Position numbers and translations under genes: made by a program. The notes under the pieces were generated by a model. That model had not been told where the DNA came from. It saw nothing but the letters and a program-made list of their open reading frames with translations, and did no database searches. A stretch of DNA of 64,000 nucleotides from Perna viridis (taxonomy: Eukaryota), in contig CM074512.1 in NCBI GenBank assembly GCA_037379345.1, positions 48,815,597 to 48,879,596 of the forward strand. Direction: 5' to 3'. This document shows, piece after piece, positions 10,946 through 53,493 of this stretch. Numbering within the stretch: position 1 is the stretch's first letter; every line of letters begins with the position of its first letter.

Positions 10946-11423
10946 TGTTGCATATGAACATCAAACTACTAACATCCGTCTTTATTGACAATTATCTATA
11001 TCTCTATAATTTGATGAAAAGATCACGACAAATTACGACAAATTACTTTTGTCAAATTTATTTTGAATTATAAATTTTAACATACGTATTTATGCAGCCA
11101 GTACAAGTATGGATACATATTGTTCGAGGGGTTCATATCCTTTGTTGCCGTTATGTTTCGAAATCCAGTGAAACTTGTCTAACCAGAACACTGAATCGTA
11201 CACAATCCCTTCTTGATCAGAAATCAGTTATCAGTTTTTTTTTTATAAAAATCAGACAAAAGGCGATTCATGTATATGTCAAAAACCAACCAACTTTATT
11301 TTAATTTTTATTCAGAAACACAAACAGACAACATAACCATTAATGGTGTGTCATTTGGTAGTTTGCACTTTTGAGACATTGTATGTATTGTAGGGACTGG
11401 TCCTTATTTCTTTACATTATAGA

Positions 11424-11503
11424 CGGGGGATAGCGCGAACGCAGTCCCCCACACTAAAAAATTGCGTACCCGAGTTGCCCACATTTGGGGCAATCGCAGG
11501 CTT
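11424..11503 (-). pseudogene. U1: U1 snRNA 3' fragment (nt 85-164), disrupted by truncated retrotransposon
   Basis: Identical to array U1; nt 51-84 missing. Confidence 0.9.
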
Positions 11504-12908
11504 TTTTTTTTCTTCTCCGAGATGCAAAAATTTAAATGTTTAGACAATAGAGCAATTAACTGTTTAAAACAGTTAACAGTGAAAATTATACTAACAACAC
11601 AATAGGAAATAGAGCACACTCGACAATGACATGTGAGTATATTTTTAGTGTTAATAAAACGTTCTATCAAACAATGAACAGAAAATATTTGAGGCTCTAA
11701 GCATTTAACACTGAACAGAAATAAGCTAAATGAAACACATCTTGTCACGTATAAAATGAAAACGGCAAATATAGAAAGTGAAAAATTACCAATAACACAT
11801 AATAATATACGATAATACAAAATAATAAACGAAAAGAGAAAAATACACCAATAGGTTGAGTAGTCCATGAACAGAAAGGCTATCAAAACAGGGGGGATAG
11901 AATAGTACTCATTGTCCATAATCATTCCGTTTCATTGTCGTTTAACTAACATCAACAGCTGTGTCCTCCGTGTTCTCCGGGGCTGTTATCAAAGAAGGGA
12001 GGAAAGGCTTCATTTCCATTTCCTCCAAATCATCACTACCACCATAATCATTGCACTCCGCCGCTCTTCGCTTCTTGGTTACAGACTCCTCTGTACCATG
12101 CCTCATCCCGCGCTTGTCTTGCGGGGAAGCCATACTCTCCTTCTCCTTCTCTTGCCCCCTCCCGCGCTTGTCTTGCGGGGGGCCCATACCTTCTTTATCC
12201 TGCCCCCTCCCGCGCTTGTCTTGCGGGGGGCCCATACTCTCTTTCTCCTGCCTCCTCCCGCGCCGGTCTTGCTGGGAAACCACATTCACCTCCTGCTCAT
12301 CTGAAACTCTTGCTGCAGCAGCATATGAGGGTTTTCCTTTACTTGGGCAGGTAGCCCTCTGATGACCCACCTCATTACATTTTAGACATAATGAGGGTCT
12401 CCCTCTCATGGTTACAAGTATCCGCCTTCCAGCAACAGTCACCTTGTACGGTACCTTATGAATATCAGAATCTGGCATTTCAACCAGATAATTAATGACA
12501 CCATTTTTTAACTTGGTGCCATCAATCACAGTGTCCTCAAAATCTTTCTTAATGATTTTTCCATAATTTTGTAGGAAATTGTCCACATAACAACTCTTCA
12601 TATGTAGAGGATACCAATGTATTCTAATGGCAACTTGTCTCTTATCTAAACGCTCGAAATGGTATAGACTTCCACCTGGAGCCTCAAAAGTTTGTCCCGT
12701 GCCCAAAGCATCAACTGTATCAGTGGAACTCAACCCAAGATACCAATCTCCACCCTCATCGCACTTATAAATAGCTGTAATCAATGAAGGATTAATGGTT
12801 CCTTTCAGCGCCTCAAGTACTTGTCCTCTGGTATTAAACCACTTTTTCCCAAAATTGACCTTCAGTGTTTTACTCACTGCGTCAGCATCCAAATACTCCA
12901 TTTTGATT
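11504..12908 (-). mobile_element. 3'-truncated type A Tx1-like element (ORF1 plus part of the inter-ORF region) with short poly(A)
   Basis: Matches 29002-30398 with a few substitutions; A10 tail (11502-11511, first 2 nt shared with U1); no ORF2. Confidence 0.92.
11942..12901 (-). CDS. Tx1-like ORF1 protein type A (319 aa, CCHC zinc knuckle)
   Basis: ATG in AAAATGG context; CLKCNEVGHQRATC knuckle; PSYAAAA motif; PPQDKRGRG repeats. Confidence 0.85.
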   Translation of the reverse strand: MEYLDADAVSKTLKVNFGKKWFNTRGQVLEALKGTINPSLITAIYKCDEGGDWYLGLSSTDTVDALGTGQTFEAPGGSLYHFERLDKRQVAIRIHWYPLHMKSCYVDNFLQNYGKIIKKDFEDTVIDGTKLKNGVINYLVEMPDSDIHKVPYKVTVAGRRILVTMRGRPSLCLKCNEVGHQRATCPSKGKPSYAAAARVSDEQEVNVVSQQDRRGRRQEKESMGPPQDKRGRGQDKEGMGPPQDKRGRGQEKEKESMASPQDKRGMRHGTEESVTKKRRAAECNDYGGSDDLEEMEMKPFLPSLITAPENTEDTAVDVS

Positions 12909-12958
12909 CTGGGGGAACCGCCTTTGTGATCACGGTATCCCCTGTACCAGGTAAGTAT
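12909..12958 (-). pseudogene. U1: U1 snRNA 5' fragment (nt 1-50) fused to retrotransposon
   Basis: ATACTTACCTGG...GGTTCCCCCAG followed by element sequence. Confidence 0.92.
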
Positions 12959-24670: not shown

Positions 24671-24795
24671 CGGGGGATAGCGCGAACGCAGTCCCCCACA
24701 CTAAAAAATTGCGTACCCGAGTTGCCCACATTTGGGGCAATCGCAGGCTTCAGCCTAACCGGAGTGCAATGGAAAGGCCTCGACCTGGGGGAACC
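24671..24795 (-). pseudogene. U1: U1 snRNA 3' fragment (nt 40-164) after insertion
   Basis: Resumes at GGTTCCCCCAG after the element poly(A). Confidence 0.92.
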
Positions 24796-25195
24796 TTTTT
24801 TTTTTTAATTTCAAAAATTTATTCAGTAAAACTTCATACGTAATACATGACAATAAATTAAAACATAAATATCACAGATAATACATTGTGCATGTATACA
24901 GATATGAATAATGTATGCATAAATATCAACTTTGTTATTGGTTAATGCAAGAAAGAACATTGGGATAAATAGTTATATCTCAAATCAATACATGATACAT
25001 AGGTATATAATACCTTCTGACACAACAAAACACCTGAAGAGAAAAAAATTCAAATGCCCTGTTATTATAGTACTCCTGTAAATTACAAGACGCCACCCTC
25101 CCATTAACTCAAATAGGGAAAAAATACAAAAATTAAAACTTAAGGGTACCTTAATAGAATCAAGTTAATAAACCTATTACTTCAAGACTTATAAC

Positions 25196-28100
25196 TCAGA
25201 AAAAAGTGATTTCTAAATCATCATCTTGTACTTTACAGAGTAAGTCACTTGAGCACCAAAACTCAGTGAACTTTAGTATTGGAAATCTATAAAAGTCAGC
25301 TTCAATACGTAATTTCAGCTGCTGTAAATAGAAAATATAAATATCATTTGGTAAAACATGTTTACCATCAAACTTTTTACTATTTCTTTTAATCCATACA
25401 GTTTTACAATATAAAGAAATCAACAATAATACCACACTTTTAGTTCTTCCAACAACATTAATATCTCTAAAAAGTATATGTTTATAATCTAAGGAAATAC
25501 TTCCATTAGATAAAGAGAATATCCAATTCTTAATAAGAACAAATAAGTTTTTGACATCCCTACATTCGCAAAATAAATGAATTAAAGTTTCCGGTTCTCT
25601 GGCACAAAAAGTACATCTATTAGACTTATACACATTATGATTAAATAATAAACTATTAGTAGGCAAAACATTATGCACTACTTTATAAATAACATCTCTA
25701 GAAAAGCGATCAATAAACTTATCAAATACATTTTTAAATACAATTCTAAAATCCACTCCAGGATTTTTTTCAACAACTTTAGGAACATAAATTTCCTTTT
25801 CTAATAGAACCTTATACAAAACTTTTGTAGTTACACCCCTTAGATCTACATCACTACACAATTTTAAATCAATTAAAGCATCAATACAACATCTATAAAA
25901 GGACGAAATGACCTCACTGTGAGGCATGTATAAAGATGTAAACAATTCATTATAAAATCGTAAAGAATAACCAGCCCAGTATATCGCATAATTGACAAAC
26001 TTTACCTGTCTATTGTTAATAATATCGGACAAGTGTTTCAAGCGTAACGCTTTTAACTTTAAATCGATATTCACAATATTCAAACCACCCTGACTTAAAT
26101 CTAAATATAAATTCTTACGACTAATCATTTCTACCTTATCATTCCATATAAACTTAAAAATACAACGTTGGAATTTAATTATCCAATGTTTAGACATCGG
26201 CACAACAGTACCTACATACCACAACTTAGATAAAGCACACGTATTTACAATAATTGATTTTTCTAATAAAGATAAACTTCTCAACCTCCATAATTTCAAG
26301 GTCTTTTCTAACTTAATAAAAATGGGATGCCATACATCATCCTGTGACAAATCATTACCACACTTAATACCTATTAATTTCATACTATCAACAAAATTTA
26401 TACCAAATCTATGATTTTCTTTTCTACATTTCCAAGCACCTAACCACATACCTTTTGTTTTATTTTTATTAAGCTTGGAACCTGAACCTTTACCAAATAA
26501 ATCAATCCAATATAAAAATTTATGTATACTTTTATCAGTAGTAACAATACCAGTACTATCATCGGCAAAAACAGATATTTTACAATTATCAACAGAACCA
26601 GGAATATTCATACCAATAATATCAGTATCGTTCACAACTTTACGAACAAAAGGTTCAAGACATAAAACATATAATAAAGGTGACAAACTACACCCTTGTT
26701 TGACAGATCTAGTGATCCGCACAGGGTCAGAAATAAAATTATTCACAATAACTGATGAAGACAAATCATGATATAAAATCTTGATCCATTTAATTAAATT
26801 CGGACCAAAATTAAATTTTTCTAAAACATTGAATAAAAAGGTATGATTAATACGATCAAATGCTTTCTCTTGATCAAGAGAAATGAAAGCACAATTAATA
26901 TTCTTCTGATTAACATAGTCAATAATGTTCCTATGTAAATGGGCATTGTCTAAAATACTTCTGCCCCTAACAGCACAAGTTTGATCAACACCAATAATTT
27001 TATCAGAAACTAAACCCATTCTATTACAAATAATTTTACTTAAAATCTTAACATCAATATTAATTAAACTAATAGGACGATAACATTTAACATCAAAATG
27101 TCTAGAAACATCTTTACAAATAAGAGATATATAACTTGTTCTTTGACTAACTGACAAAGTATTTTCATCAAAAATATTATCATACAAATTTAATAACAAA
27201 GGTGCAAAAATGTCAATAAATTTGACATAAAATTCTTTGGGCAGTCCATCAGGCCCCGGTGATTTATTGTTATCCATACCTTTAACAGAGTTAATAATTT
27301 CATCCTCAGTAATATTAGATTCACAAATATCTCTATCATCATTATCTAACATAGGTAAATCATCTAAGAAATATTTCATAACATCAAAATCAATAGCTTC
27401 CTCTTTAAATAAATCACTATAAAAGTTTTCAAATTGCTTAATAATATCGCAATGTTTTGTAAAAATACCATCATCATTTCTAATTTCACAAATATTTTTC
27501 TTTTTTCCTCTACGAACTTCCTTTTGGAAAAAATATTGACTCGGAAGTTCACTATTATCTAGTAAATTTGCTTTACTTCTAATTTGAGCACCTCTAAAAT
27601 CTTTAACATAATAATCTTTAATCTCATTCTTAAGTACATCAATTTGTTCTGAAAAATTACCTGGCGTTTTCTTTTCTAATTTACATAAATGAAAATATCG
27701 TTTCTCTAATTGTCTAATTACAGTATACTTAAGTTTATTTTTCTTTTTACAATAATCAATACAAAAGACCTTAATATTTTCTTTAAAATAATCCCACATA
27801 TCAATACACATATCTAAACCATCGATAAAGTTAATAAACCACTCTCGAAAAGAAATACAAAAAGCTCTATCGTCTAATATAGAGGTGTTTAATTTCCAAT
27901 AACCTTCACCTCTCTTTACATCAGTGTTATTTACAAACGATACATAAACACAATCATGATCAGAAAAAGCAAAAGGTAGAACGTCACAATTCTTAACAAA
28001 AGGTTTTAATTCACTAGAAAAGTACATGCAATCTAATCGACACGCAATATTATTACCCCGCCAGGTGACACATTTACAATTAGGATATAAATACCTATAA

Positions 28101-28696
28101 ACGTCACAAAGGTCAAAATCAGATACAATGGTTCTTAATTTGTCAACACCTGTAGTACCTAAATGGGGATTTCCCCCGATCTTATCAAGTTTTGGATCCA
28201 TAATACAATTAAAATCACCACCAAATATTTTACAATTCTGTGTCATTAGAAAAGGATATATATACTCAAAGAATTCTTTTCTATCACTACTATCATTAGG
28301 TGCATAAATATTAAACAATCTATACGGAACATTATCAATTTTAACATCAATAAATTGAAAACGTCCGTCTATATCTCTATGATATTTAACTACAACAAAA
28401 TCTATAGAATGAGAAATAAAAATAGCTGTTCCCCTACTTAAATTAGAACCGAAGTTCCAAAAACATCTATACATATGTAAGTATTTATCTAAAATCTTAC
28501 TTACTTTAGAATTCGAAACATGAGTTTCTTGTAAAAATAATATATCTATATATTTACGCAAACAAAATTGCTTCAATACATACTGACATTTCACATCTAA
28601 TAATCCATTAATATTCAAAGTAGCACAATTGATTATGTTTTCTTTTTCAGATAAAGTCGTAATAATATTGATAATTAAGAACGGTATATAACTCAA
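25196..28696 (-). CDS. ORF2: AP-like endonuclease, reverse transcriptase and C-terminal zinc finger (Tx1/L1 type); frame opens at TTG
   Basis: NINGL, LQETH, NIYAPN, GGDFN, SDHD; KSPGPDG, YRPISL, DQEKAFD, QGCSLSP, FADD; CTFC..ETLIHLFCEC. Confidence 0.95.
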   Translation of the reverse strand: MSYIPFLIINIITTLSEKENIINCATLNINGLLDVKCQYVLKQFCLRKYIDILFLQETHVSNSKVSKILDKYLHMYRCFWNFGSNLSRGTAIFISHSIDFVVVKYHRDIDGRFQFIDVKIDNVPYRLFNIYAPNDSSDRKEFFEYIYPFLMTQNCKIFGGDFNCIMDPKLDKIGGNPHLGTTGVDKLRTIVSDFDLCDVYRYLYPNCKCVTWRGNNIACRLDCMYFSSELKPFVKNCDVLPFAFSDHDCVYVSFVNNTDVKRGEGYWKLNTSILDDRAFCISFREWFINFIDGLDMCIDMWDYFKENIKVFCIDYCKKKNKLKYTVIRQLEKRYFHLCKLEKKTPGNFSEQIDVLKNEIKDYYVKDFRGAQIRSKANLLDNSELPSQYFFQKEVRRGKKKNICEIRNDDGIFTKHCDIIKQFENFYSDLFKEEAIDFDVMKYFLDDLPMLDNDDRDICESNITEDEIINSVKGMDNNKSPGPDGLPKEFYVKFIDIFAPLLLNLYDNIFDENTLSVSQRTSYISLICKDVSRHFDVKCYRPISLINIDVKILSKIICNRMGLVSDKIIGVDQTCAVRGRSILDNAHLHRNIIDYVNQKNINCAFISLDQEKAFDRINHTFLFNVLEKFNFGPNLIKWIKILYHDLSSSVIVNNFISDPVRITRSVKQGCSLSPLLYVLCLEPFVRKVVNDTDIIGMNIPGSVDNCKISVFADDSTGIVTTDKSIHKFLYWIDLFGKGSGSKLNKNKTKGMWLGAWKCRKENHRFGINFVDSMKLIGIKCGNDLSQDDVWHPIFIKLEKTLKLWRLRSLSLLEKSIIVNTCALSKLWYVGTVVPMSKHWIIKFQRCIFKFIWNDKVEMISRKNLYLDLSQGGLNIVNIDLKLKALRLKHLSDIINNRQVKFVNYAIYWAGYSLRFYNELFTSLYMPHSEVISSFYRCCIDALIDLKLCSDVDLRGVTTKVLYKVLLEKEIYVPKVVEKNPGVDFRIVFKNVFDKFIDRFSRDVIYKVVHNVLPTNSLLFNHNVYKSNRCTFCAREPETLIHLFCECRDVKNLFVLIKNWIFSLSNGSISLDYKHILFRDINVVGRTKSVVLLLISLYCKTVWIKRNSKKFDGKHVLPNDIYIFYLQQLKLRIEADFYRFPILKFTEFWCSSDLLCKVQDDDLEITFF

Positions 28697-29415
28697 AACG
28701 AATTAGCCAAATTATAATTACAGGTAACTTGCAAGAAATTAAATGTCTGGTTAGGGAAAAGAACAAAGAAACTAATTGCACTGTAAAAATCTAAATGTCC
28801 AAACAAAAGACAAAACACAGTAGATTTAAAAAATCTTTTGAAAATGCAACAGTATTTCAAACGGTCACAATGAAAGAATATGTAACGAAATTTTATCGTC
28901 TGCAAACAAAGATAAATTACAGGTAAGTTATAAACATTATGATAAGAAAAGTTTAAATACCTAAAGGAAGAAAATTGTTCAAGGTGAACTGATACAATAG
29001 ACTTCTCCGACATGCAAAAATTTAAATGTTTAGACAATAGAGCAATTAACTGTTTAAAACAGTTAACAGTGAAAATGATACTAACAAAACAATAGAAAAT
29101 AAAGCACACTCGACAATGACATGTGAGTATATTTTTAGTGTTAATAAAACGTTCTATCAAACAATGAACAGAAAATATTTGAGGCTCTAAGCATTTAACA
29201 CTGAACAGAAATAAGCTAAATGAAACACATCTTGTCACGTATAAAATGAAAACGGCAAATATAGAAAGTGAAAAATTACCAATAACACATAATAATATAC
29301 GATAATACAAAATAATAAACGAAAAGAGAAAAATACACCAATAGGTTGAGTAGTCCATGAACAGAAAGGCTATCAAAACAGGGGGGATAGAATAGTACTC
29401 ATTGTCCATAATCAT
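28693..29415 (-). CDS. Putative third ORF (240 aa, very hydrophobic) between ORF1 and ORF2
   Basis: ATG 16 nt after the ORF1 stop; fills the whole inter-ORF region; its TGA overlaps the ORF2 TTG. Confidence 0.45.
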   Translation of the reverse strand: MIMDNEYYSIPPVLIAFLFMDYSTYWCIFLFSFIILYYRILLCVIGNFSLSIFAVFILYVTRCVSFSLFLFSVKCLEPQIFSVHCLIERFINTKNILTCHCRVCFIFYCFVSIIFTVNCFKQLIALLSKHLNFCMSEKSIVSVHLEQFSSFRYLNFSYHNVYNLPVIYLCLQTIKFRYIFFHCDRLKYCCIFKRFFKSTVFCLLFGHLDFYSAISFFVLFPNQTFNFLQVTCNYNLANSF

Positions 29416-29431
29416 TCCGTTTCATTGTCGT

Positions 29432-30391
29432 TTAACTAACATCAACAGCTGTGTCCTCCGTGTTCTCCGGGGCTGTTATCAAAGAAGGGAGGAAAGGCTT
29501 CATTTCCATTTCCTCCAAATCATCACTACCACCATAATCATTGCACTCCGCCGCTCTTCGCTTCTTGGTTACAGACTCCTCTGTACCATGCCTCATCCCG
29601 CGCTTGTCTTGCGGGGAAGCCATACTCTCCTTCTCCTTCTCTTGCCCCCTCCCGCGCTTGTCTTGCGGGGGGCCCATACCTTCTTTATCCTGCCCCCTCC
29701 CGCGCTTGTCTTGCGGGGGGCCCATACTCTCTTTCTCCTGCCTCCTCCCGCGCTGGTCTTGCTGGGAAACCACATTCACCTCCTGCTCATCTGAAACTCT
29801 TGCTGCAGCAGCATATGAGGGTTTTCCTTTACTTGGGCAGGTAGCCCTCTGATGACCCACCTCATTACATTTTAGACATAATGAGGGTCTCCCTCTCATG
29901 GTTACAAGTATCCGCCTTCCAGCAACAGTCACCTTGTACGGTACCTTATGAACATCAGAATCTGGCATTTCAACCAGATAATTAATGACACCATTTTTTA
30001 ACTTGGTGCCATCAATCACAGTGTCCTCAAAATCTTTCTTAATGATTTTTCCATAATTTTGTAGGAAATTGTCCACATAACAACTCTTCATATGTAGAGG
30101 ATACCAATGTATTCTAATGGCAACTTGTCTCTTATCTAAACGCTCGAAATGGTATAGACTTCCACCTGGAGCCTCAAAAGTTTGTCCCGTGCCCAAAGCA
30201 TCAACTGTATCAGTGGAACTCAACCCAAGATACCAATCTCCACCCTCATCGCACTTATAAATAGCTGTAATCAATGAAGGATTAATGGTTCCTTTCAGCG
30301 CCTCAAGTACTTGTCCTCTGGTATTAAACCACTTTTTCCCAAAATTGACCTTCAGTGTTTTACTCACTGCGTCAGCATCCAAATACTCCAT
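29432..30391 (-). CDS. Tx1-like ORF1 protein type A (319 aa)
   Basis: CCHC knuckle CLKCNEVGHQRATC; ATG 7 nt inside the element. Confidence 0.88.
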   Translation of the reverse strand: MEYLDADAVSKTLKVNFGKKWFNTRGQVLEALKGTINPSLITAIYKCDEGGDWYLGLSSTDTVDALGTGQTFEAPGGSLYHFERLDKRQVAIRIHWYPLHMKSCYVDNFLQNYGKIIKKDFEDTVIDGTKLKNGVINYLVEMPDSDVHKVPYKVTVAGRRILVTMRGRPSLCLKCNEVGHQRATCPSKGKPSYAAAARVSDEQEVNVVSQQDQRGRRQEKESMGPPQDKRGRGQDKEGMGPPQDKRGRGQEKEKESMASPQDKRGMRHGTEESVTKKRRAAECNDYGGSDDLEEMEMKPFLPSLITAPENTEDTAVDVS

Positions 30392-30398
30392 TTTGATT

Positions 30399-30448
30399 CT
30401 GGGGGAACCGCCTTTGTGATCACGGTATCCCCTGTACCAGGTAAGTAT
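30399..30448 (-). pseudogene. U1: U1 snRNA 5' fragment (nt 1-50) fused to element
   Basis: Direct match. Confidence 0.92.
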
Positions 30449-31122
30449 GCTGTAGCACTGTATCGCAGGGCGACTATTTTCAACGCATTTGTAGTTTTCT
30501 GGCGGTGCAATCAATACTTTATTATTGCAGAAAAATTCGTAGTTCATACGCAATGATGAATTGTTGTTGACAAGCACGCGGCAAGTATTTTTTGGCATCT
30601 TATTGATTTACAGAAATGTGAAAAATGCACAATTCAGTTCGATACTGAACAAATATGAAAACCGAAGAAAGTCTAATGTTTAGTAACTCACTTTGTATAC
30701 GTATGCCCAACCTTTTCCCCGTTGTGCTATAAGTGAAATAGCCGGGAAAATTCAGTCAGGATTGGCCCAGTAATTTATACTAAAACTGAGCTTTTTATCA
30801 CATGAAGTTGGTTTTAATTACCAGTGCATTCATTCTAAAATAGATTTCAATTACTATCAATTTCAAATCCAGTCATACATACATACACTAACATGCAGTC
30901 GCGCTCGCCAAGAAGTGCCGAAAAGTGTGAACAGTGTTGAACATATGGTAATACTGACACGTGTACATGCAGTTCTCAATTGTCATACATGGGTATAAAA
31001 AGACAAAATCTGATTTACGGACACATATCGTAGGAAAAATAAACAAATTAAGCGTATTATTTACAGAAAAAGAAAAGCAATTTTAGTAAATATAAGTAAC
31101 AAAAATAACCACATGTTAATCG

Positions 31123-37206: not shown

Positions 37207-37610
37207 TTTTTTTTTTTTTTAATTTCAAACAATTTATTCAGTAAAACTTCATACGTAATACATGACAATAAATTAAAACATAAATATCACAGATAATACA
37301 TTGTGCATGTATACAGATATGAATAATGTATGCATAAATATCAACTTTGTTATTGGTTAATGCAAGAAAGAACATTGGGATAAATAGTTATATCTCAAAT
37401 CAATACATGATACATAGGTATATAATACCTTCTGACACAACAAAACATCTGAAGAGAAAAAAATTCAAATGCCCTGTTATTATAGTACTCCTGTAAATTA
37501 CAAGACGCCACCCTCCCATTAACTCAAATAGGGAAAAAATACAAAAATTAAAACTTAAGGGTACCTTAATAGAATCAAGTTAATAAACCTATTACTTCAA
37601 GACTTATAAC

Positions 37611-40600
37611 TCAGAAAAAAGTGATTTCTAAATCATCATCTTGTACTTTACAGAGTAAGTCACTTGAGCACCAAAACTCAGTGAACTTTAGTATTGGAAA
37701 TCTATAAAAGTCAGCTTCAATACGTAATTTCAGCTGCTGTAAATAGAAAATATAAATATCATTTGGTAAAACATGTTTACCATCAAACTTTTTACTATTT
37801 CTTTTAATCCATACAGTTTTACAATATAAAGAAATCAACAATAATACCACACTTTTAGTTCTTCCAACAACATTAATATCTCTAAAAAGTATATGTTTAT
37901 AATCTAAGGAAATACTTCCATTAGATAAAGAGAATATCCAATTCTTAATAAGAACAAATAAATTTTTGACATCCCTACATTCGCAAAATAAATGAATTAA
38001 AGTTTCCGGTTCTCTGGCACAAAAAGTACATCTATTAGACTTATACACATTATGATTAAATAATAAACTATTAGTAGGCAAAACATTATGCACTACTTTA
38101 TAAATAACATCTCTAGAAAAGCGATCAAGAAACTTATCAAATACATTTTTAAATACAATTCTAAAATCCACTCCAGGATTTTTTTCAACAACTTTAGGAA
38201 CATAAATTTCCTTTTCTAATAGAACCTTATACAAAACTTTTGTAGTTACACCCCTTAGATCTACATCACTACACAATTTTAAATCAATTAAAGCATCAAT
38301 ACAACATCTATAAAAGGACGAAATGACCTCACTGTGAGGCATGTTTAAAGATGTAAACAATTCATTATAAAATCGTAAAGAATAACCAGCCCAGTATATC
38401 GCATAATTGACAAACTTTACCTGTCTATTGTTAATAATATCGGACAAGTGTTTCAAGCGTAACGCTTTTAACTTTAAATCGATATTCACAATATTCAAAC
38501 CACCCTGACTAAAATCTAAATATAAATTCTTACGACTAATCATTTCTACCTTATCATTCCATATAAACTTAAAAATACAACGTTGGAATTTAATTATCCA
38601 ATGTTTAGACATCGGCACAACAGTACCTACATACCACAACTTAGATAAAGCACACGTATTTACAATAATTGATTTTTCTAATAAAGATAAACTTCTCAAC
38701 CTCCATAATTTCAAGGTCTTTTCTAACTTAATAAAAATGGGATGCCATACATCATCCTGTGACAAATCATTACCACACTTAATACCTATTAATTTCATAC
38801 TATCAACAAAATTTATACCAAATCTATGATTTTCTTTTCTACATTTCCAAGCACCTAACCACATACCTTTTGTTTTATTTTTATTAAGCTTGGAACCTGA
38901 ACCTTTACCAAATAAATCAATCCAATATAAAAATTTATGTATACTTTTATCAGTAGTAACAATACCAGCACTATCATCGGCAAAAACAGATATTTTACAA
39001 TTATCAACAGAACCAGGAATATTCATACCAATAATATCAGTATCGTTCACAACTTTGCGCACAAAAGGTTCAAGACATAAAACATATAATAAAGGTGACA
39101 AACTACACCCTTGTTTGACAGATCTAGTGATCCGTACAGGATCAGAAATAAAATTATTCACAATAACTGATGAAGACAAATCATGATATAAAATCTTGAT
39201 CCATTTAATTAAATTCGGACCAAAATTAAATTTTTCTAAAACATTGAATAAAAAGGTATGATTAATACGATCAAATGCTTTCTCTTGATCAAGAGAAATG
39301 AAAGCACAATTAATATTCTTCTGATTAACATAGTCAATAATGTTCCTATGTAAATGGGCATTGTCTAAAATACTTCTGCCCCTAACAGCACAAGTTTGAT
39401 CAACACCAATAATTTTATCAGAAACTAAACCCATTCTATTACAAATAATTTTACTTAAAATCTTAACATCAATATTAATTAAACTAATAGGACGATAACA
39501 TTTAACATCAAAATGTCTAGAAACGTCTTTACAAATAAGAGATATATAACTTGTTCTTTGACTAACTGACAAAGTATTTTCATCAAAAATATTATCATAC
39601 AAATTTAATAACAAAGGTGCAAAAATGTCAATAAATTTGACATAAAATTCTTTGGGCAGTCCATCAGGTCCCGGTGATTTATTGTTATCCATACCTTTAA
39701 CAGAGTTAATAATTTCATCCTCAGTAATATTTGATTCACAAACATCTCTATCATCATTATCTAACATAGGTAAATCATCTAAGAAATATTTCATAACATC
39801 AAAATCAATAGCTTCCTCTTTAAATAAATCACTATAAAAGTTTTCAAATTGCTTAATAATATCGCAATGTTTTGTAAAAATACCATCATCATTTCTAATT
39901 TCACAAATATTTTTCTTTTTACCTCTACGAACTTCCTTTTGGAAAAAATATTGACTCGGAAGTTCACTATTATCTAGTAAATTTGCTTTACTTCTAATTT
40001 GAGCACCTCTAAAATCTTTAACATAATAATCTTTAATCTCATTCTTAAGTACATCAATTTGTTCTGAAAAATTACCTGGCATTTTCTTTTCTAATTTACA
40101 TAAATGAAAATATCGTTTCTCTAATTGTCTAATCACTGTATACTTAAGTTTATTTTTCTTTTTACAATAATCAATACAAAAGACCTTAATATTTTCTTTA
40201 AAATAATCCCACATATCAATACACATATCTAAACCATCGATAAAGTTAATAAACCACTCTCGAAAAGAAATACAAAAAGCTCTATCGTCTAATATAGAGG
40301 TGTTTAATTTCCAATAACCTTCACCTCTCTTCACATCAGTGTTATTGGCAAACGATATATGAACACAATCATGATCAGAAAAAGCAAAAGGTAGAACGTC
40401 ACAATTCTTAACAAAAGGTTTTAATTCATTAGAAAAGTACATGCGATCTAATCGACACGCAATATTATTACCCCGCCAGGTGACACATTTACAATTAGGA
40501 TATAAATACCTATAAACGTCACAAAGGTCAAAATCAGATACAATGGTTCTTAATTTATCAACACCTGTAGTACCTAAATGGGGATTTCCCCCGATCTTAT

Positions 40601-41069
40601 CAAGTTTTGGATCCATAATACAATTAAAATCACCACCAAATATTTTACAATTCTGTGTCATTAGAAAAGGATATATATACTCAAAGAAATCTTTTCTATC
40701 ACTACTATCATTAGGAGCATAAATATTAAACAATCTATACGGAACATTATCAATTTTAACATCAATAAATTGAAAACGTCCGTCTATATCTCTATGATAT
40801 TTCACTACAACAAAATCTATAGAATGAGAAATAAAAATAGCTGTTCCCCTACTTAAATTAGAACCGAAGTTCCAAAAACATCTATATAATTCAAAATAAG
40901 TATTTAAGTCATTACTTATAATGGAGTTTGAAACATGCGTTTCTTGCAAAAACAAAATATCTACATGTTTACGCAAACAAAAATCTCTTAGTGCGTACTG
41001 ACACTTTACATCAAGTAACCCATTACAATTCAAAGTTGCAATATTCAATAAATTATCAATGTTTGTCAC
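37611..41069 (-). CDS. ORF2 (APE endonuclease-RT-zinc finger), type B; no ATG, first near-cognate start GTG
   Basis: Same motifs as type A; CRLDRMY. Confidence 0.95.
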   Translation of the reverse strand: MTNIDNLLNIATLNCNGLLDVKCQYALRDFCLRKHVDILFLQETHVSNSIISNDLNTYFELYRCFWNFGSNLSRGTAIFISHSIDFVVVKYHRDIDGRFQFIDVKIDNVPYRLFNIYAPNDSSDRKDFFEYIYPFLMTQNCKIFGGDFNCIMDPKLDKIGGNPHLGTTGVDKLRTIVSDFDLCDVYRYLYPNCKCVTWRGNNIACRLDRMYFSNELKPFVKNCDVLPFAFSDHDCVHISFANNTDVKRGEGYWKLNTSILDDRAFCISFREWFINFIDGLDMCIDMWDYFKENIKVFCIDYCKKKNKLKYTVIRQLEKRYFHLCKLEKKMPGNFSEQIDVLKNEIKDYYVKDFRGAQIRSKANLLDNSELPSQYFFQKEVRRGKKKNICEIRNDDGIFTKHCDIIKQFENFYSDLFKEEAIDFDVMKYFLDDLPMLDNDDRDVCESNITEDEIINSVKGMDNNKSPGPDGLPKEFYVKFIDIFAPLLLNLYDNIFDENTLSVSQRTSYISLICKDVSRHFDVKCYRPISLINIDVKILSKIICNRMGLVSDKIIGVDQTCAVRGRSILDNAHLHRNIIDYVNQKNINCAFISLDQEKAFDRINHTFLFNVLEKFNFGPNLIKWIKILYHDLSSSVIVNNFISDPVRITRSVKQGCSLSPLLYVLCLEPFVRKVVNDTDIIGMNIPGSVDNCKISVFADDSAGIVTTDKSIHKFLYWIDLFGKGSGSKLNKNKTKGMWLGAWKCRKENHRFGINFVDSMKLIGIKCGNDLSQDDVWHPIFIKLEKTLKLWRLRSLSLLEKSIIVNTCALSKLWYVGTVVPMSKHWIIKFQRCIFKFIWNDKVEMISRKNLYLDFSQGGLNIVNIDLKLKALRLKHLSDIINNRQVKFVNYAIYWAGYSLRFYNELFTSLNMPHSEVISSFYRCCIDALIDLKLCSDVDLRGVTTKVLYKVLLEKEIYVPKVVEKNPGVDFRIVFKNVFDKFLDRFSRDVIYKVVHNVLPTNSLLFNHNVYKSNRCTFCAREPETLIHLFCECRDVKNLFVLIKNWIFSLSNGSISLDYKHILFRDINVVGRTKSVVLLLISLYCKTVWIKRNSKKFDGKHVLPNDIYIFYLQQLKLRIEADFYRFPILKFTEFWCSSDLLCKVQDDDLEITFF

Positions 41070-41201
41070 GATGTGTATATAGAGTATTTACAACTGAAAC
41101 AACATAAACAAAATACCTTAAAAATTATCAAGGTATTTCAAAAAGTATTTAGAAAATAACTCAATGAAGAAAATTTAAATATCTGACTAATTACAATCAT
41201 G

Positions 41202-41636
41202 CTAATTACAGGTGAAGAATACAAATTTCAACAGGTAAGATATCGGTAGAAATTTAAATGACCAAACAAAAGCAAAAATCTTTAAATGCCCAGACAATAG
41301 AAGAAACGTTAACATCTGGATAATTACAATCAAAAATTTCAGTGCATTAAAGGTAACAAACGGAAAGGTGAAAATCAAAGATGAGTTTAAATCTCTTAGC
41401 AATAGAGAAGTAAAACTATCGTAAAATCTAATCACCAGCCAATTAACACTATAGAAAAAGTGAACTGTAAAAAGTAAAAAGAATAAAAGAGTTACTAAAC
41501 ATATTAATACAAGTAATAGATTACTATTACAAAAACTGGTTTTAAACCCAAAAAAATAAACATTAAACAGATTGCAAGCAATCCGAGATAAATAAACAAT
41601 CGAAATCAAAATCGTTAATCTAAATTCAAAGTCCAT
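41202..41636 (-). CDS. Putative third ORF type B (144 aa, hydrophobic)
   Basis: ATG 47 nt after the ORF1 stop; C-terminal LLLSGHL..TCN resembles type A LLFGHL..TCN. Confidence 0.4.
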   Translation of the reverse strand: MDFEFRLTILISIVYLSRIACNLFNVYFFGFKTSFCNSNLLLVLICLVTLLFFLLFTVHFFYSVNWLVIRFYDSFTSLLLRDLNSSLIFTFPFVTFNALKFLIVIIQMLTFLLLSGHLKIFAFVWSFKFLPISYLLKFVFFTCN

Positions 41637-41683
41637 GGGCGTATTCAGTCAGTTTAGGGGGATTATAACTATACCAAAGTCCA

Positions 41684-42655
41684 TTAACAGTCCGCGTCTA
41701 CATCAATTGCTTCCTCTTCAGGGTTTCTCATTCCCGGTGGAATTAAAAGTGGCCTCTCTAAAGCTTCTTTCTTCACCCTCTTCTCAACGTCTGGTTGTTC
41801 CTTGTTGTCATCTCTGGCTCTTTTAGCATCAGTACCTCGGTCCCTGGAGTAGGAACCTTCACTGCTATATTCAGTACCTCGGCCCTCCTCCACGGGACCT
41901 TCACTGCCGGTTGATACATCAGTGCCCGATCGGGCACCTTCATCACTAGTCGGTACATCGGATCCCTGGGTGGATCCTTCACCGCTGGTTGGTACATCAG
42001 ACCCCTCCTGGGATCCTTCACCACTCGTTGTTGACTCGGTGCTCGGCTGAGCACTTTCATCGCGTCTAGGTCGCCGACTAGTCGCCGCTGCCTTGCCACA
42101 TTTGGCTCTCACATGACCAAATTCTCCACACTTAAGGCATTGAGCTTGCCTTCCTGCAACGGTAATCAAGACATCCCTACCATAAATTTTAGCTCGGTAT
42201 GGCAAACTGCTATATTGACTGTCGGTTGAATACATTTTCCCAGAAACTACACCAGTTTTATACGTAACCTCTTCGAAGGTGTCAGTATCATGCCTCAGTG
42301 CAACCTCACTTCCGTATTTTCTTAGTCCCTCTTTCAACAGGTCTAGTTTTAAGTGCATTGGGAACCAATGCACTTTAAAACGAACTAAACGCCTATCTAT
42401 CCGGCTAAAGAAGAGTGGAACTCCTTTCGCCTGGAAAGACCGCTCCATCGTAAGCCTCTCTACTGTGAGTGGGTGTTTGAAGGAAACAAACCAGTCACCA
42501 TCTTCACCACACTTGTAGACGGCGTCTATCTCGTCACCATTGACTACTTCCTTCAAATATGGTATAACTTCACGTTGAGTAAACAATCTCTTCTTCAAAC
42601 CAATTGCCAACCGGAGAGTCCTACCGGACACACTTCCATCTACATAGTGGTCCAT
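41684..42655 (-). CDS. Tx1-like ORF1 protein type B (323 aa)
   Basis: CLKCGEFGHVRAKC knuckle; VYKCGEDGDWF and VHWFPMH homologous to type A; EGS..GSDVPTS repeats. Confidence 0.88.
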   Translation of the reverse strand: MDHYVDGSVSGRTLRLAIGLKKRLFTQREVIPYLKEVVNGDEIDAVYKCGEDGDWFVSFKHPLTVERLTMERSFQAKGVPLFFSRIDRRLVRFKVHWFPMHLKLDLLKEGLRKYGSEVALRHDTDTFEEVTYKTGVVSGKMYSTDSQYSSLPYRAKIYGRDVLITVAGRQAQCLKCGEFGHVRAKCGKAAATSRRPRRDESAQPSTESTTSGEGSQEGSDVPTSGEGSTQGSDVPTSDEGARSGTDVSTGSEGPVEEGRGTEYSSEGSYSRDRGTDAKRARDDNKEQPDVEKRVKKEALERPLLIPPGMRNPEEEAIDVDADC

Positions 42656-42709
42656 TCTGGTAAATAAGGGATTCCTCACGGAATACACCTTATGTATGAG
42701 TACAGAGGA

Positions 42710-42764
42710 TCGACCTGGGGGAACCGCCTTTGTGATCACGGTATCCCCTGTACCAGGTAAGTAT
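42710..42764 (-). pseudogene. U1: U1 snRNA 5' fragment (nt 1-55) fused to element
   Basis: Direct match. Confidence 0.92.
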
Positions 42765-47834: not shown

Positions 47835-48240
47835 TTTTTTTTTTTTTTTTAATTTCAAACAATTTATTCAGTAAAACTTCATACGTAATACATGACAATA
47901 AATTAAAACATAAATATCACAGATAATACATTGTGCATGTATACAGATATGAATAATGTATGCATAAATATCAACTTTGTTATTGGTTAATGCAAGAAAG
48001 AACATTGGGATAAATAGTTATATCTCAAATCAATACATGATACATAGGTATATAATACCTTCTGACACAACAAAACACCTGAAGAGAAAAAAATTCAAAT
48101 GCCCTGTTATTATAGTACTCCTGTAAATTACAAGACGCCACCCTCCCATTAACTCAAATAGGGAAAAAATACAAAAATTAAAACTTAAGGGTACCTTAAT
48201 AGAATCAAGTTAATAAACCTATTACTTCAAGACTTATAAC

Positions 48241-51200
48241 TCAGAAAAAAGTGATTTCTAAATCATCATCTTGTACTTTACAGAGTAAGTCACTTGAGCA
48301 CCAAAACTCAGTGAACTTTAGTATTGGAAATCTATAAAAGTCAGCTTCAATACGTAATTTCAGCTGCTGTAAATAGAAAATATAAATATCATTTGGTAAA
48401 ACATGTTTACCATCAAACTTTTTACTATTTCTTTTAATCCATACAGTTTTACAATATAAAGAAATCAACAATAATACCACACTTTTAGTTCTTCCAACAA
48501 CATTAATATCTCTAAAAAGTATATGTTTATAATCTAAGGAAATACTTCCATTAGATAAAGAGAATATCCAATTCTTAATAAGAACAAATAAGTTTTTGAC
48601 ATCCCTACATTCGCAAAATAAATGAATTAAAGTTTCCGGTTCTCTGGCACAAAAAGTACATCTATTAGACTTATACACATTATGATTAAATAATAAACTA
48701 TTAGTAGGCAAAACATTATGCACTACTTTATAAATAACATCTCTAGAAAAGCGATCAATAAACTTATCAAATACATTTTTAAATACAATTCTAAAATCCA
48801 CTCCAGGATTTTTTTCAACAACTTTAGGAACATAAATTTCCTTTTCTAATAGAACCTTATACAAAACTTTTGTAGTTACACCCCTTAGATCTACATCACT
48901 ACACAATTTTAAATCAATTAAAGCATCAATACAACATCTATAAAAGGACGAAATGACCTCACTGTGAGGCATGTATAAAGATGTAAACAATTCATTATAA
49001 AATCGTAAAGAATAACCAGCCCAGTATATCGCATAATTGACAAACTTTACCTGTCTATTGTTAATAATATCGGACAAGTGTTTCAAGCGTAACGCTTTTA
49101 ACTTTAAATCGATATTCACAATATTCAAACCACCCTGACTTAAATCTAAATATAAATTCTTACGACTAATCATTTCTACCTTATCATTCCATATAAACTT
49201 AAAAATACAACGTTGGAATTTAATTATCCAATGTTTAGACATCGGCACAACAGTACCTACATACCACAACTTAGATAAAGCACACGTATTTACAATAATT
49301 GATTTTTCTAATAAAGATAAACTTCTCAACCTCCATAATTTCAAGGTCTTTTCTAACTTAATAAAAATGGGATGCCATACATCATCCTGTGACAAATCAT
49401 TACCACACTTAATACCTATTAATTTCATACTATCAACAAAATTTATACCAAATCTATGATTTTCTTTTCTACATTTCCAAGCACCTAACCACATACCTTT
49501 TGTTTTATTTTTATTAAGCTTGGAACCTGAACCTTTACCAAATAAATCAATCCAATATAAAAATTTATGTATACTTTTATCAGTAGTAACAATACCAGTA
49601 CTATCATCGGCAAAAACAGATATTTTACAATTATCAACAGAACCAGGAATATTCATACCAATAATATCAGTATCGTTCACAACTTTACGAACAAAAGGTT
49701 CAAGACATAAAACATATAATAAAGGTGACAAACTACACCCTTGTTTGACAGATCTAGTGATCCGCACAGGGTCAGAAATAAAATTATTCACAATAACTGA
49801 TGAAGACAAATCATGATATAAAATCTTGATCCATTTAATTAAATTCGGACCAAAATTAAATTTTTCTAAAACATTGAATAAAAAGGTATGATTAATACGA
49901 TCAAATGCTTTCTCTTGATCAAGAGAAATGAAAGCACAATTAATATTCTTCTGATTAACATAGTCAATAATGTTCCTATGTAAATGGGCATTGTCTAAAA
50001 TACTTCTGCCCCTAACAGCACAAGTTTGATCAACACCAATAATTTTATCAGAAACTAAACCCATTCTATTACAAATAATTTTACTTAAAATCTTAACATC
50101 AATATTAATTAAACTAATAGGACGATAACATTTAACATCAAAATGTCTAGAAACATCTTTACAAATAAGAGATATATAACTTGTTCTTTGACTAACTGAC
50201 AAAGTATTTTCATCAAAAATATTATCATACAAATTTAATAACAAAGGTGCAAAAATGTCAATAAATTTGACATAAAATTCTTTGGGCAGTCCATCAGGCC
50301 CCGGTGATTTATTGTTATCCATACCTTTAACAGAGTTAATAATTTCATCCTCAGTAATATTAGATTCACAAATATCTCTATCATCATTATCTAACATAGG
50401 TAAATCATCTAAGAAATATTTCATAACATCAAAATCAATAGCTTCCTCTTTAAATAAATCACTATAAAAGTTTTCAAATTGCTTAATAATATCGCAATGT
50501 TTTGTAAAAATACCATCATCATTTCTAATTTCACAAATATTTTTCTTTTTTCCTCTACGAACTTCCTTTTGGAAAAAATATTGACTCGGAAGTTCACTAT
50601 TATCTAGTAAATTTGCTTTACTTCTAATTTGAGCACCTCTAAAATCTTTAACATAATAATCTTTAATCTCATTCTTAAGTACATCAATTTGTTCTGAAAA
50701 ATTACCTGGCGTTTTCTTTTCTAATTTACATAAATGAAAATATCGTTTCTCTAATTGTCTAATTACAGTATACTTAAGTTTATTTTTCTTTTTACAATAA
50801 TCAATACAAAAGACCTTAATATTTTCTTTAAAATAATCCCACATATCAATACACATATCTAAACCATCGATAAAGTTAATAAACCACTCTCGAAAAGAAA
50901 TACAAAAAGCTCTATCGTCTAATATAGAGGTGTTTAATTTCCAATAACCTTCACCTCTCTTTACATCAGTGTTATTTACAAACGATACATAAACACAATC
51001 ATGATCAGAAAAAGCAAAAGGTAGAACGTCACAATTCTTAACAAAAGGTTTTAATTCACTAGAAAAGTACATGCAATCTAATCGACACGCAATATTATTA
51101 CCCCGCCAGGTGACACATTTACAATTAGGATATAAATACCTATAAACGTCACAAAGGTCAAAATCAGATACAATGGTTCTTAATTTGTCAACACCTGTAG

Positions 51201-52460: not shown

Positions 52461-52476
52461 TCCGTTTCATTGTCGT

Positions 52477-53436: not shown

Positions 53437-53443
53437 TTTGATT

Positions 53444-53493
53444 CTGGGGGAACCGCCTTTGTGATCACGGTATCCCCTGTACCAGGTAAGTAT
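53444..53493 (-). pseudogene. U1: U1 snRNA 5' fragment (nt 1-50) fused to element
   Basis: Direct match. Confidence 0.92.

What the first reader, a model, noticed from the sequence alone, without database searches (positions are those of the whole stretch)
30389..30448. Promoterless element hijacks the U1 promoter: chimeric U1(1-50)-ORF1 mRNA
Seen: type A has only 7 nt (AATCAAA) between U1 nt 50 and the ORF1 ATG, and type B only 54 nt, leaving no room for an L1-style internal promoter. U1 nt 1-55 contain no ATG, so the first AUG from the U1 start site is the ORF1 start, in strong context (AAAAUGG / AGAAUGG). The element ends with AATAAA plus poly(A). Inference: it is transcribed from the host Pol II snRNA promoter as an mRNA whose 5'UTR is the U1 splice-site-pairing end plus an intact stem-loop I (the U1-70K binding site) but with no Sm site. 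This parallels R2 co-transcription with rDNA, and the leader might recruit U1-70K or steer the RNP back to U1 loci.
Basis: partly seen in the sequence, partly recalled or inferred. Interest (0 to 1): 0.85.

Follow-up and report, generated by a model that had tools for sequence, protein, structure and literature searches.

The report
Retrotransposon borrowing the U1 gene promoter
A jumping gene sits at one exact spot inside U1 spliceosomal RNA genes with almost no leader of its own, so it most likely uses the U1 gene's promoter and first 50-55 bases as its mRNA leader; this strategy is already known from related elements in other small-RNA genes, and only the U1 target appears to be new.

Summary
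The window is a tandem array of 1.7 kb units, each with an SRP RNA gene and a U1 gene. Four of its 21 U1 genes carry a non-LTR retrotransposon in the sense orientation: three of type A (one 3'-cut) and one of type B.

- **Type A:** starts right after U1 nt 50, with the ORF1 ATG 7 nt later.
- **Type B:** starts after U1 nt 55, with the ATG 54 nt later.
- **Shared features:** no upstream ATG, AATAAA plus poly(A), and 11 or 16 bp target duplications.
- **Junctions and promoter:** the same two 5' junctions recur in a second U1 array on another chromosome. No copy has a longer 5' end. The 600 nt upstream of interrupted units is identical to intact units.
- **RNA evidence:** two probable RNA runs from different studies each hold a contig running from ORF1 30 nt into the U1 leader, which is the k-mer limit. 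Neither has a contig on the U1 upstream region.
- **Relatives:** sister families sit, also in sense, near the 5' ends of U2, U4 and U5 genes.

Co-transcription from the U1 promoter is therefore the best reading (about 0.6). The start site was not mapped, and the U1-70K and homing ideas are untested. The element is a Keno-like element with a new target, and its strategy is the known one of R2 and SLACS.

The parts
30449..31122 (-). U1 upstream region, shared with the divergent SRP RNA gene that starts at 31123 (+). This is the presumed Pol II snRNA-type promoter driving the element.
   Evidence: 600 nt upstream of all four interrupted U1 units has 0 mismatches to an intact unit. A PSE-like motif lies at about -89 to -68 (30516-30537), at the same distance as in U1 (C9), U2 and U4 genes; it is the weakest match in this array.
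30399..30448 (-). U1 snRNA nt 1-50, comprising the 5' splice-site-pairing end and stem-loop I. Proposed 5' leader of the chimeric mRNA. Nt 40-50 (30399-30409) form the upstream copy of the target duplication.
   Evidence: Contigs in X1 and X3 cover 30399-30428 joined to ORF1.
30392..30398 (-). The element's own 5' UTR in type A, 7 nt (AATCAAA).
   Evidence: The same 5' end is seen at 53443, 12908, C9:30044919 and, in an old copy at 93% identity, C9:30063005.
29432..30391 (-). ORF1 of type A, 319 aa, with one CCHC zinc knuckle and a C-terminal repeat region.
   Evidence: 29% aa identity to type B ORF1 over the full length.
28697..29431 (-). AT-rich spacer between ORF1 and ORF2. It contains a 240-aa ORF that looks non-coding.
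   Evidence: No Pfam match and a low-complexity F/L/I-rich translation.
25196..28696 (-). ORF2: AP-type endonuclease, reverse transcriptase and a zf-RVT zinc-binding domain. There is no in-frame ATG ahead of the endonuclease domain.
   Evidence: Pfam PF03372, PF00078 and PF13966. Sequence.
24796..25195 (-). 3' UTR with AATAAA (24818-24823) and an A11 tail (24796-24806).
24671..24795 (-). U1 nt 40-164 downstream of the element. Nt 40-50 (24785-24795) form the second copy of the 11-bp target duplication.
37207..42709 (-). Type B element. It has a 54-nt 5' UTR (42656-42709), ORF1 with ATG at 42655 and stop at 41684, ORF2 at 37611-41069, and an A14 tail.
   Evidence: 98.2% nt identity to type A over ORF2 and the 3' UTR; the first ~1.7-1.8 kb (ORF1 and most of the spacer) gives no DNA-level match.
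42710..42764 (-). U1 nt 1-55 preceding type B. The 16-bp target duplication is nt 40-55.
47835..53443 (-). Second full type A copy. It is preceded by U1 nt 1-50 (53444-53493), has an A16 tail, and its 3' junction lies at U1 nt 41.
   Evidence: It differs from the first copy by 2 mismatches.
11502..12958 (-). 3'-cut type A copy: U1 nt 1-50, element nt 1-1397, then A10, joined to U1 nt 87. U1 nt 51-86 are missing.

Best explanation
**What it is.** A site-specific non-LTR retrotransposon of the L1/Tx1 type. It has an ORF1 with a CCHC knuckle, an ORF2 with AP-endonuclease, RT and zinc domains, and a poly(A) tail. Its endonuclease nicks the bottom strand of U1 genes between nt 39 and 40.

**Why it needs the host promoter.** It always lies in the same sense as U1 and has essentially no 5' UTR of its own: 7 nt in type A and 54 nt in type B.

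**Proposed mechanism.** Its mRNA is most likely started by RNA polymerase II at U1 +1 from the host's PSE-type snRNA promoter. That gives an RNA whose 5' UTR is U1 nt 1-50/55 and whose first AUG opens ORF1. The RNA is ended by the element's own AATAAA/poly(A) signal.

**What is inferred, not shown.**
- Without an Sm site, the RNA should keep an m7G cap and behave as an mRNA.
- The leader probably also serves as homology that fixes the 5' junction when the cDNA is joined to a new U1 gene.

**What is shown.** The anatomy, the site specificity, the invariant junctions, the intact promoter, and RNA-run contigs that cross the junction.
For: 1. **Junction anatomy.** Confirmed.
2. **No longer 5' end anywhere.** Searches of the whole 723 Mb genome with the first ~500 nt of each type found no copy with a longer 5' end.
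3. **Same boundaries at separate loci.**
   - The type A boundary (U1 nt 50 | AATCA) recurs three times in the C2 array, with different tails and 3' junctions.
   - It also recurs at C9:30063005, in an old copy at 93% identity behind a diverged U1.
   - It also recurs at C9:30044919. That copy follows another copy's tail plus the 11-nt target remnant rather than a whole U1 leader.
   - The type B boundary (nt 55) recurs on C2 and C9.
4. **Junction is inherited per subfamily.** The A and B ORF2s match at 98.2% nt identity over ORF2 and the 3' UTR, yet keep different, subfamily-specific 5' junctions. This fits a junction inherited with a leader-bearing RNA better than one remade by second-strand cleavage.
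5. **The 3'-cut copy.** It has the exact nt-50 5' junction although its 3' junction is at U1 nt 87.
6. **Promoter intact.** 600 nt upstream of the interrupted units is identical to intact units.
7. **RNA runs.** Runs X1 and X3, from two studies, have contig sets of the size of transcriptomes. Each holds a 731-nt contig covering 29698-30428. That is ORF1, the 7 nt, and exactly 30 nt of U1, which is the most a k=31 graph can keep before meeting intact U1. Neither run has a contig on 30449-30800, although that DNA is about 5 times more abundant in the genome than the element.
8. **No ribozyme.** No self-cleaving ribozyme or other Rfam family matches the 5' region at E<=1, so the leader is probably retained.
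9. **Sister families.** A 100%-supported clade sits in sense near the 5' ends of U2 (after nt 23-51), U4 (after nt 59) and U5, with 5' UTRs of about 25-90 nt.
10. **Principle in the literature.** PMC4494074 states that a transcribed target removes the need for a promoter and that co-transcription strengthens targeting.
Against: - **Start site not seen.** Contigs cannot show RNA ends.
- **RNA status is a guess.** X1 and X3 are RNA only by the tool's guess plus my argument from the missing promoter contigs.
- **Raw reads uninformative.** The one raw RNA run (X23) laid 3 reads, none crossing the junction.
- **Genomic-looking contig.** X4 holds a U1-variant contig that includes upstream DNA, so some runs carry DNA or read-through.
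- **Human snRNA genes argue against long transcripts.** Pol II leaves U1 within about 900 bp, and CPSF-73 is not recruited (PMC3874203). A 5.6 kb polyadenylated RNA from such a promoter is therefore not a given.
- **Weak sequence arguments.** The missing upstream ATG and the good start context are no better than chance. The U2 sister family has four upstream ATGs.
- **Promoter-less copies exist.** One full type A copy (C9:30044919) follows another copy's poly(A) plus 11 nt, not a U1 promoter. A relative forms head-to-tail arrays. Copies without a directly adjacent snRNA promoter therefore persist.
Confidence: 0.62

Rival explanations
1. The element has its own downstream (internal) promoter within the first part of ORF1, as insect jockey- or I-type elements do. 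It starts at or near element nt 1, and the U1 leader is only flanking DNA.
For: Internal promoters of non-LTR elements can lie downstream of +1 (my own knowledge). Head-to-tail copies without an adjacent U1 promoter exist. 5' UTRs differ in length and sequence among the families.
Against: Contigs in X1 and X3 carry 30 nt of U1 joined to the element, so at least some RNA starts upstream of element nt 1. A 7-nt 5' UTR or less would be very poor for AUG recognition. No conserved 5' motif is shared by types A and B or by the U2, U4 and U5 families; this was judged by eye, not by a formal motif search.
Confidence: 0.12
2. The junction-crossing RNA is incidental. It comes from read-through or pervasive transcription of the array, or from upstream element copies, or from DNA in the libraries. 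There is no dedicated use of the U1 promoter, and the copies in the window may currently be silent.
For: The raw RNA run X23 is almost empty over the stretch. X4 holds a U1-variant contig with upstream and downstream flanks. The RNA status of X1 and X3 is a guess.
Against: In X1 and X3 the multicopy U1 upstream region has no contig, while ORF1 has word depth 12-17. This argues against both DNA carry-over and read-through from upstream. The same contig appears in two studies.
Confidence: 0.16
3. The copies are relics spread by unequal crossing-over within the arrays. The identical junctions reflect duplication rather than repeated insertion, so they say nothing about transcription.
For: The two full type A copies in the window differ by only 2 of 5654 nt and lie in identical units. 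The two U4 copies are 9.8 kb apart in one array.
Against: Tails and 3' junctions differ between copies: A11 at nt 40, A16 at nt 41, and A10 at nt 87. Copies on C2, C9 and C8 are 99.2-99.7% identical. The C8 copy sits in a non-U1 site with its own 17-bp duplication. The full-length window copies have open ORFs.
Confidence: 0.1

Closest known systems
Keno (Tx1-clade, AP-endonuclease non-LTR retrotransposons in U2 snRNA genes; Kojima and Fujiwara 2004, as described in PMC4494074 and PMC4640811)
   Same: AP-endonuclease, RT and zinc-domain ORF2, a poly(A) tail, and sense insertion at one site of a Pol II snRNA gene. The nearest relatives of the U1 family are U2-gene elements whose 3' flank begins at GTATCTG. 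That matches the region of the Keno/Utopia target strings quoted in PMC4640811.
   Different: The target is U1 (nt 39/40), not U2. In 2015 the only snRNA-gene transposons listed as reported were Keno and Utopia (U2), Dada-U1 and Dada-U6 (PMC4640811). I found no later paper on a U1-targeting non-LTR element in the held library. Placement against named Keno/Tx1 sequences could not be tested.
R2 (28S rDNA element co-transcribed with the rRNA precursor)
   Same: A promoterless, site-specific element expressed through the host gene's promoter. Upstream target sequence on the RNA is thought to guide precise 5' joining (PMC4494074, citing Eickbush 2000/2010 and Fujimoto 2004).
   Different: R2 has a restriction-like endonuclease, is made by Pol I, and frees itself with an HDV-like ribozyme. 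Here the endonuclease is AP-type and the promoter is Pol II snRNA-type. No ribozyme match was found. With the AUG only 7 nt inside the element, the host leader must stay on as the 5' UTR.
SLACS / CZAR / CRE (elements in spliced-leader RNA genes of trypanosomatids)
   Same: They insert in sense a few nucleotides into a Pol II small-RNA gene, between nt 11 and 12 of the mini-exon (PMC5814959). From my own memory of Patrick et al. 2008, which I could not read here, SLACS RNA starts at +1 of the interrupted SL RNA gene. That makes it the closest functional precedent.
   Different: A different clade with a restriction-like endonuclease, in protists. The host leader is only 11 nt, carries no structured protein-binding stem-loop, and there is no poly(A)-type 3' end of the L1 kind.
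Dada-U1 (DNA transposons in U1 genes of zebrafish; PMC3706591)
   Same: U1 snRNA genes are used as a safe multicopy target.
   Different: A DDE-type DNA transposon with 6-bp duplications at a different U1 site, and with no RNA intermediate or promoter borrowing.

Membership tests
Target-specific AP-endonuclease non-LTR retrotransposon (L1/Tx1 group, Keno-like) | ORF2 with an N-terminal AP-type endonuclease followed by a reverse transcriptase | tested here: met
   PF03372 (E 1.5e-10 in A, 1.3e-13 in B) and PF00078 (E about 2-4e-32) in both types.
Target-specific AP-endonuclease non-LTR retrotransposon (L1/Tx1 group, Keno-like) | C-terminal zinc-binding domain after the RT, and an ORF1 with a CCHC knuckle | tested here: met
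   PF13966 zf-RVT. A CX2CX4HX4C motif is read directly in both ORF1 translations.
Target-specific AP-endonuclease non-LTR retrotransposon (L1/Tx1 group, Keno-like) | Poly(A) tail, target-site duplication and 5'-truncated copies (target-primed reverse transcription) | tested here: met
   Tails of A10-A20; duplications of 11, 16 and 17 bp; 5'-cut copies on C9 and C8.
Target-specific AP-endonuclease non-LTR retrotransposon (L1/Tx1 group, Keno-like) | Repeated insertion at one site of a multicopy sequence | tested here: met
   3' junction at U1 nt 40 (once at nt 41) in arrays on C2 and C9. One off-target copy sits at a site sharing GGC|GGTT.
Target-specific AP-endonuclease non-LTR retrotransposon (L1/Tx1 group, Keno-like) | RT phylogeny places it with named Tx1/Keno reference elements | not testable with these tools
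   No named Repbase references were available. A quick ML tree only shows a 100%-supported clade with U2-, U4- and U5-gene elements. The careful tree search did not finish.
Promoterless elements co-transcribed with their target gene (R2-like strategy) | Sense orientation inside a transcribed host gene, downstream of its promoter | tested here: met
   All U1, U2, U4 and U5 family copies are in sense, 23-59 nt from the snRNA 5' end where the 5' junction could be read (U1, U2, U4).
Promoterless elements co-transcribed with their target gene (R2-like strategy) | Chimeric host-element transcript starting at the host gene's start site | tested here: inconclusive
   Contigs in two probable RNA runs cross the junction by 30 nt, and those runs hold no upstream contig. 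RNA ends cannot be read from contigs.
Promoterless elements co-transcribed with their target gene (R2-like strategy) | Self-cleaving ribozyme that removes the host leader (R2 proper) | tested here: not met
   No ribozyme family at gathering score in the window, nor at E<=1 in 29400-30700. The element works like R2 in promoter use but is not an R2-type element.
SLACS/CZAR/CRE group | Restriction-like endonuclease C-terminal to the RT | tested here: not met
   The endonuclease is AP-type and N-terminal. This is a functional analogue only.

The most novel reading that the evidence does not exclude
One clade of Keno-like elements has spread over the Pol II spliceosomal snRNA genes (U1, U2, U4, U5). 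It always lands in sense within the first 23-59 nt where that was read. The snRNA promoter plus 5' leader then serves three purposes: as promoter, as capped 5' UTR (m7G is kept because the Sm site is left behind), and as the homology arm that sets an inherited, subfamily-specific 5' junction. On this reading a PSE-type promoter routinely yields a 5.6 kb polyadenylated mRNA in this animal. The U1 stem-loop I on that mRNA might additionally bind U1-70K.
Probability: 0.35. Interest if true: 0.65.

Novelty: new member of a known kind. Interest (0 to 1): 0.5.

Why it matters
**If the start site is confirmed**, this would be a natural case of a metazoan snRNA-type Pol II promoter producing a long, polyadenylated, translated mRNA. 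Work on human snRNA genes suggests such promoters are ill-suited to that.

**It would also give a compact system for two questions.** One is what decides between Integrator/3'-box processing and cleavage/polyadenylation. The other is how an RNA-borne host leader fixes the 5' junction of a LINE.

**For transposon biology**, it adds U1, and in the same genome U4, to the list of snRNA genes targeted by non-LTR elements. It also shows target switching within one clade.

It is not a new principle. R2, SLACS/CZAR and Keno already embody it.

Tried and rejected
- **Ribozyme at the 5' junction (R2 model).** No Rfam match.
- **Longer 5' UTR copies elsewhere in the genome.** None found. The C8 copies are 5'-cut.
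- **The 240-aa ORF between ORF1 and ORF2 as a third gene.** It has no Pfam match and a low-complexity translation, so I treat it as spacer.
- **The 388-aa ORF starting at 30598 as the true ORF1.** Its first 69 codons read through the U1 promoter and leader, in a different U1 frame from type B. I rejected it as a chance open frame.
- **'First AUG' as a family-wide rule.** Rejected. The U2 family has four upstream ATGs, and both U4 copies have an ATG in the leader.
- **Naming the clade from databases.** The protein search and the Atlas gave no Tx1 or Keno names.
- **Papers on SLACS transcription and on U1 promoters driving protein-coding genes.** They could not be retrieved. Those points rest on my own knowledge and are marked as such.
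- **The careful tree search.** It did not finish, so only the quick tree is reported.

Full report
**Setting.**
- Rfam finds 20 SRP RNA genes (+) and 20 U1 genes (-) in the window, in units of about 1.7 kb. Three of the U1 hits are weak, shortened matches next to large gaps in the array.
- A motif search finds 21 U1 5' ends. Seventeen continue as intact U1. Four continue into foreign sequence after nt 50 (three cases) or nt 55 (one case).
- The window is C2:48815597-48879596 of a 723 Mb animal genome.

**The observation.**
- On the minus strand, U1 +1 is at 30448 and U1 nt 50 at 30399. The 7 nt AATCAAA follow, then an ATG at 30391 opens a 319-codon frame.
- At the other end, AATAAA (24818-24823) and an A11 tail are followed by U1 from nt 40, which gives an 11-bp target duplication.
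- Type B (37207-42709) follows U1 nt 55. It has 54 nt before its ATG (42655), an A14 tail and a 16-bp duplication.
- Neither leader (57 and 109 nt) has an ATG before ORF1. Stem-loop I is predicted in the type A chimeric leader; in type B only its inner helix is predicted.
Two of its arguments are weak, however:
  - An ATG-free leader of this length is expected by chance in about 0.4 and 0.2 of cases (my estimate).
  - The sister U2 family has four upstream ATGs.

**What the element is.**
- ORF2 carries an AP-type endonuclease, a reverse transcriptase and a zf-RVT zinc domain.
- ORF1 has a CCHC knuckle.
- Between the two lies about 735 nt of AT-rich spacer. Its 240-aa ORF looks non-coding.
- ORF2 has no in-frame ATG ahead of the endonuclease.
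- Types A and B are 98.2% identical over ORF2 and the 3' UTR. Their ORF1 regions have no DNA-level match and encode proteins only 29% identical.

**Is the short 5' end real or a truncation?**
- Searching the whole genome with the first ~500 nt of each type found no copy with more 5' sequence.
- A second U1 array lies on C9. Its units are 1.07 kb, carry no SRP gene, and have a U1 with two differences, at nt 18 and nt 46. It holds these copies:
  - a type B copy after U1 nt 55;
  - an old type A copy (93% identity) after nt 50 of a diverged U1;
  - a full type A copy lying head-to-tail behind a 5'-cut copy, joined by a poly(A) tail plus the 11-nt target.
- Copies in the window differ in tail length and 3' junction: A11 at nt 40, A16 at nt 41, A10 at nt 87. 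They are therefore not all array duplicates.
- A 5'-cut copy on C8 sits in a non-U1 site that shares GGC|GGTT with the U1 target, and it has its own 17-bp duplication.

**The leader as part of the RNA.**
- A and B have nearly the same endonuclease yet keep different, subfamily-constant 5' junctions (nt 50 versus nt 55).
- The 3'-cut copy at 11502-12958 has the normal nt-50 5' junction although its tail abuts U1 nt 87.
- Both facts are most simply explained if the RNA template carries the U1 leader and the cDNA end pairs with the target's U1 5' part. This is the model proposed for R2, as cited in PMC4494074.
- This is inference from few copies. On C9 the leaders carry the local U1 variant, so the leader is not simply transduced unchanged.

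**Promoter.**
- The 600 nt upstream of all four interrupted units has no mismatch to an intact unit.
- A motif resembling ATTTTGCAnAGAAA lies about 70-90 nt upstream of U1 (C9), U2 and U4 genes. A weaker version lies in the C2 U1 units. I take it as the likely PSE, but did not test it.

**RNA evidence.**
- The index listed no run on record as RNA that holds the stretch. Fourteen holders were guessed to be RNA.
- In X1 and X3, from two studies, a 731-nt contig covers 29698-30428: ORF1, the 7 nt and exactly 30 nt of U1. A k=31 assembly must break there, because U1 nt 21-50 are shared with intact U1.
- Neither run has any contig on 30449-30800. That DNA is present in every unit of the array, so the runs are not DNA, and read-through from upstream is at most rare.
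- This places the start of the junction-bearing RNA between U1 nt 1 and about nt 20, consistent with U1 +1. Contigs cannot show ends.
- The raw RNA run X23 laid three reads. One of them is an intact-U1 read, so X23 decides nothing.
- X4 holds a genomic-looking U1-variant contig, and I did not use it for this argument.

**Relatives.**
- ORF2 DNA searches found families at 72-76% identity in this genome.
  - One family sits in a U2 array (C12). The element follows U2 nt 23, has about 80 nt of its own 5' UTR, and its 3' flank starts at GTATCTG.
  - Another sits in a U4 array (C5). The element follows U4 nt 59, has a 26-nt UTR, and makes a duplication of about 21 bp.
- Protein relatives at 61-66% identity on metagenome contigs lie in U2 genes (L024, L026) and U5 genes (L025, L032). 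One forms head-to-tail arrays with a 13-nt UTR (L033).
- A quick ML tree joins all nine in a 100%-supported clade, with the U1 family sister to this genome's U2 family. The careful search did not finish.
- All are in sense and near the snRNA 5' end. Sense orientation, a 5'-proximal site and a short UTR are thus a trait of the clade, which fits promoter borrowing.

**Comparison with known systems.**
- Kojima (PMC4494074) describes Keno in U2 genes and Tx1 families in U5 genes. The paper states that a transcribed target makes a promoter unnecessary and that co-transcription can strengthen targeting.
- PMC4640811 (2015) lists only Keno, Utopia, Dada-U1 and Dada-U6 as reported snRNA-gene transposons. 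I found no later paper on a U1- or U4-targeting non-LTR element. Repbase could not be consulted.
- CZAR and SLACS insert between nt 11 and 12 of the spliced-leader exon (PMC5814959). That SLACS RNA starts at the SL gene's +1 is my recollection of Patrick et al. 2008 and was not read here.
- Unlike R2, no ribozyme is detectable. With the AUG 7 nt in, the host leader must remain as the 5' UTR.

**Caveat from snRNA biology.**
- In human cells Pol II leaves U1 genes within about 900 bp, and CPSF-73 is not recruited (PMC3874203). A 5.6 kb polyadenylated product is therefore not self-evident.
- I recall a report that mouse U1 promoters can drive protein-coding genes (Bartlett et al. 1996) but could not retrieve it.

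**Verdict.**
- Use of the U1 promoter is the best explanation (0.62), but the start site is unmapped.
- The U1-70K and homing ideas are untested.
- The element is a new member (U1 target) of a known kind, using a known strategy. Interest is moderate.

Noticed in passing
G000 C12:15.13-15.30 Mb (L021, L023, L027-L030) and C5:23.83 Mb (L022, L031): Sister families at 72-76% nt identity in ORF2 interrupt U2 and U4 snRNA gene arrays in the same genome, also in sense. I found no U4-targeting non-LTR element in the papers searched.
   Followed up: partly
L022:7661-7724 and L031: Both element-bearing U4 5' fragments read CGATGAGG where neighbouring intact U4 genes read CGATAAGG, which creates an upstream ATG. 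Either this is a variant carried with the element's leader or the two copies are array duplicates.
   Followed up: no
L018:2600-2650 and 6750-6790 (G000 C8:43.55 Mb): A 5'-cut type A copy lies outside any U1 gene, with a 17-bp duplication (GGTTTTTGCTGGTCTTA). The site shares GGC|GGTT with the U1 target, which hints at the bases the endonuclease reads. Rfam gives no match for the host sequence.
   Followed up: partly
window 40860-42709 versus 28600-30398: Types A and B share ORF2 and the 3' UTR at 98.2% nt identity, but their ORF1 proteins are only 29% identical. This suggests a recombinational swap of the 5' module.
   Followed up: partly
window 28560-28700 and 41000-41070: ORF2 has no in-frame ATG before the endonuclease domain in either type, and it follows about 0.6-0.7 kb of AT-rich spacer. 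Its translation must use an unconventional start.
   Followed up: no
window 11424-12958: A copy holding only the first 1397 nt of type A, then A10, is joined to U1 nt 87. It looks like the insertion of a prematurely ended RNA. No AATAAA lies just upstream of the end point.
   Followed up: partly
L003:1440-1510 (G000 C9:30044860-30044930) and L033 (metagenome contig): Head-to-tail element copies are joined by a poly(A) tail plus only the short target remnant: 11 nt here and 12 nt in L033. In L033 this repeats at least four times with a 5.25 kb period.
   Followed up: partly
G000 C9:30.025-30.063 Mb (L011, L015, L012, L016): A second U1 array has 1.07 kb units without SRP genes. Its U1 differs from the window's at nt 18 and nt 46, and its upstream region is unrelated apart from the PSE-like motif.
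   Followed up: partly
window 30399-30514, run X4: A 556-nt contig holds an intact U1 variant with changes at -2 and -5 and a different, shorter upstream region. This points to a third kind of U1 locus, present in that run as RNA or DNA.
   Followed up: no
window 1-11400: The array ends at about 11400. The flanking 11 kb holds unrelated ORFs of up to 322 aa, which I did not examine.
   Followed up: no
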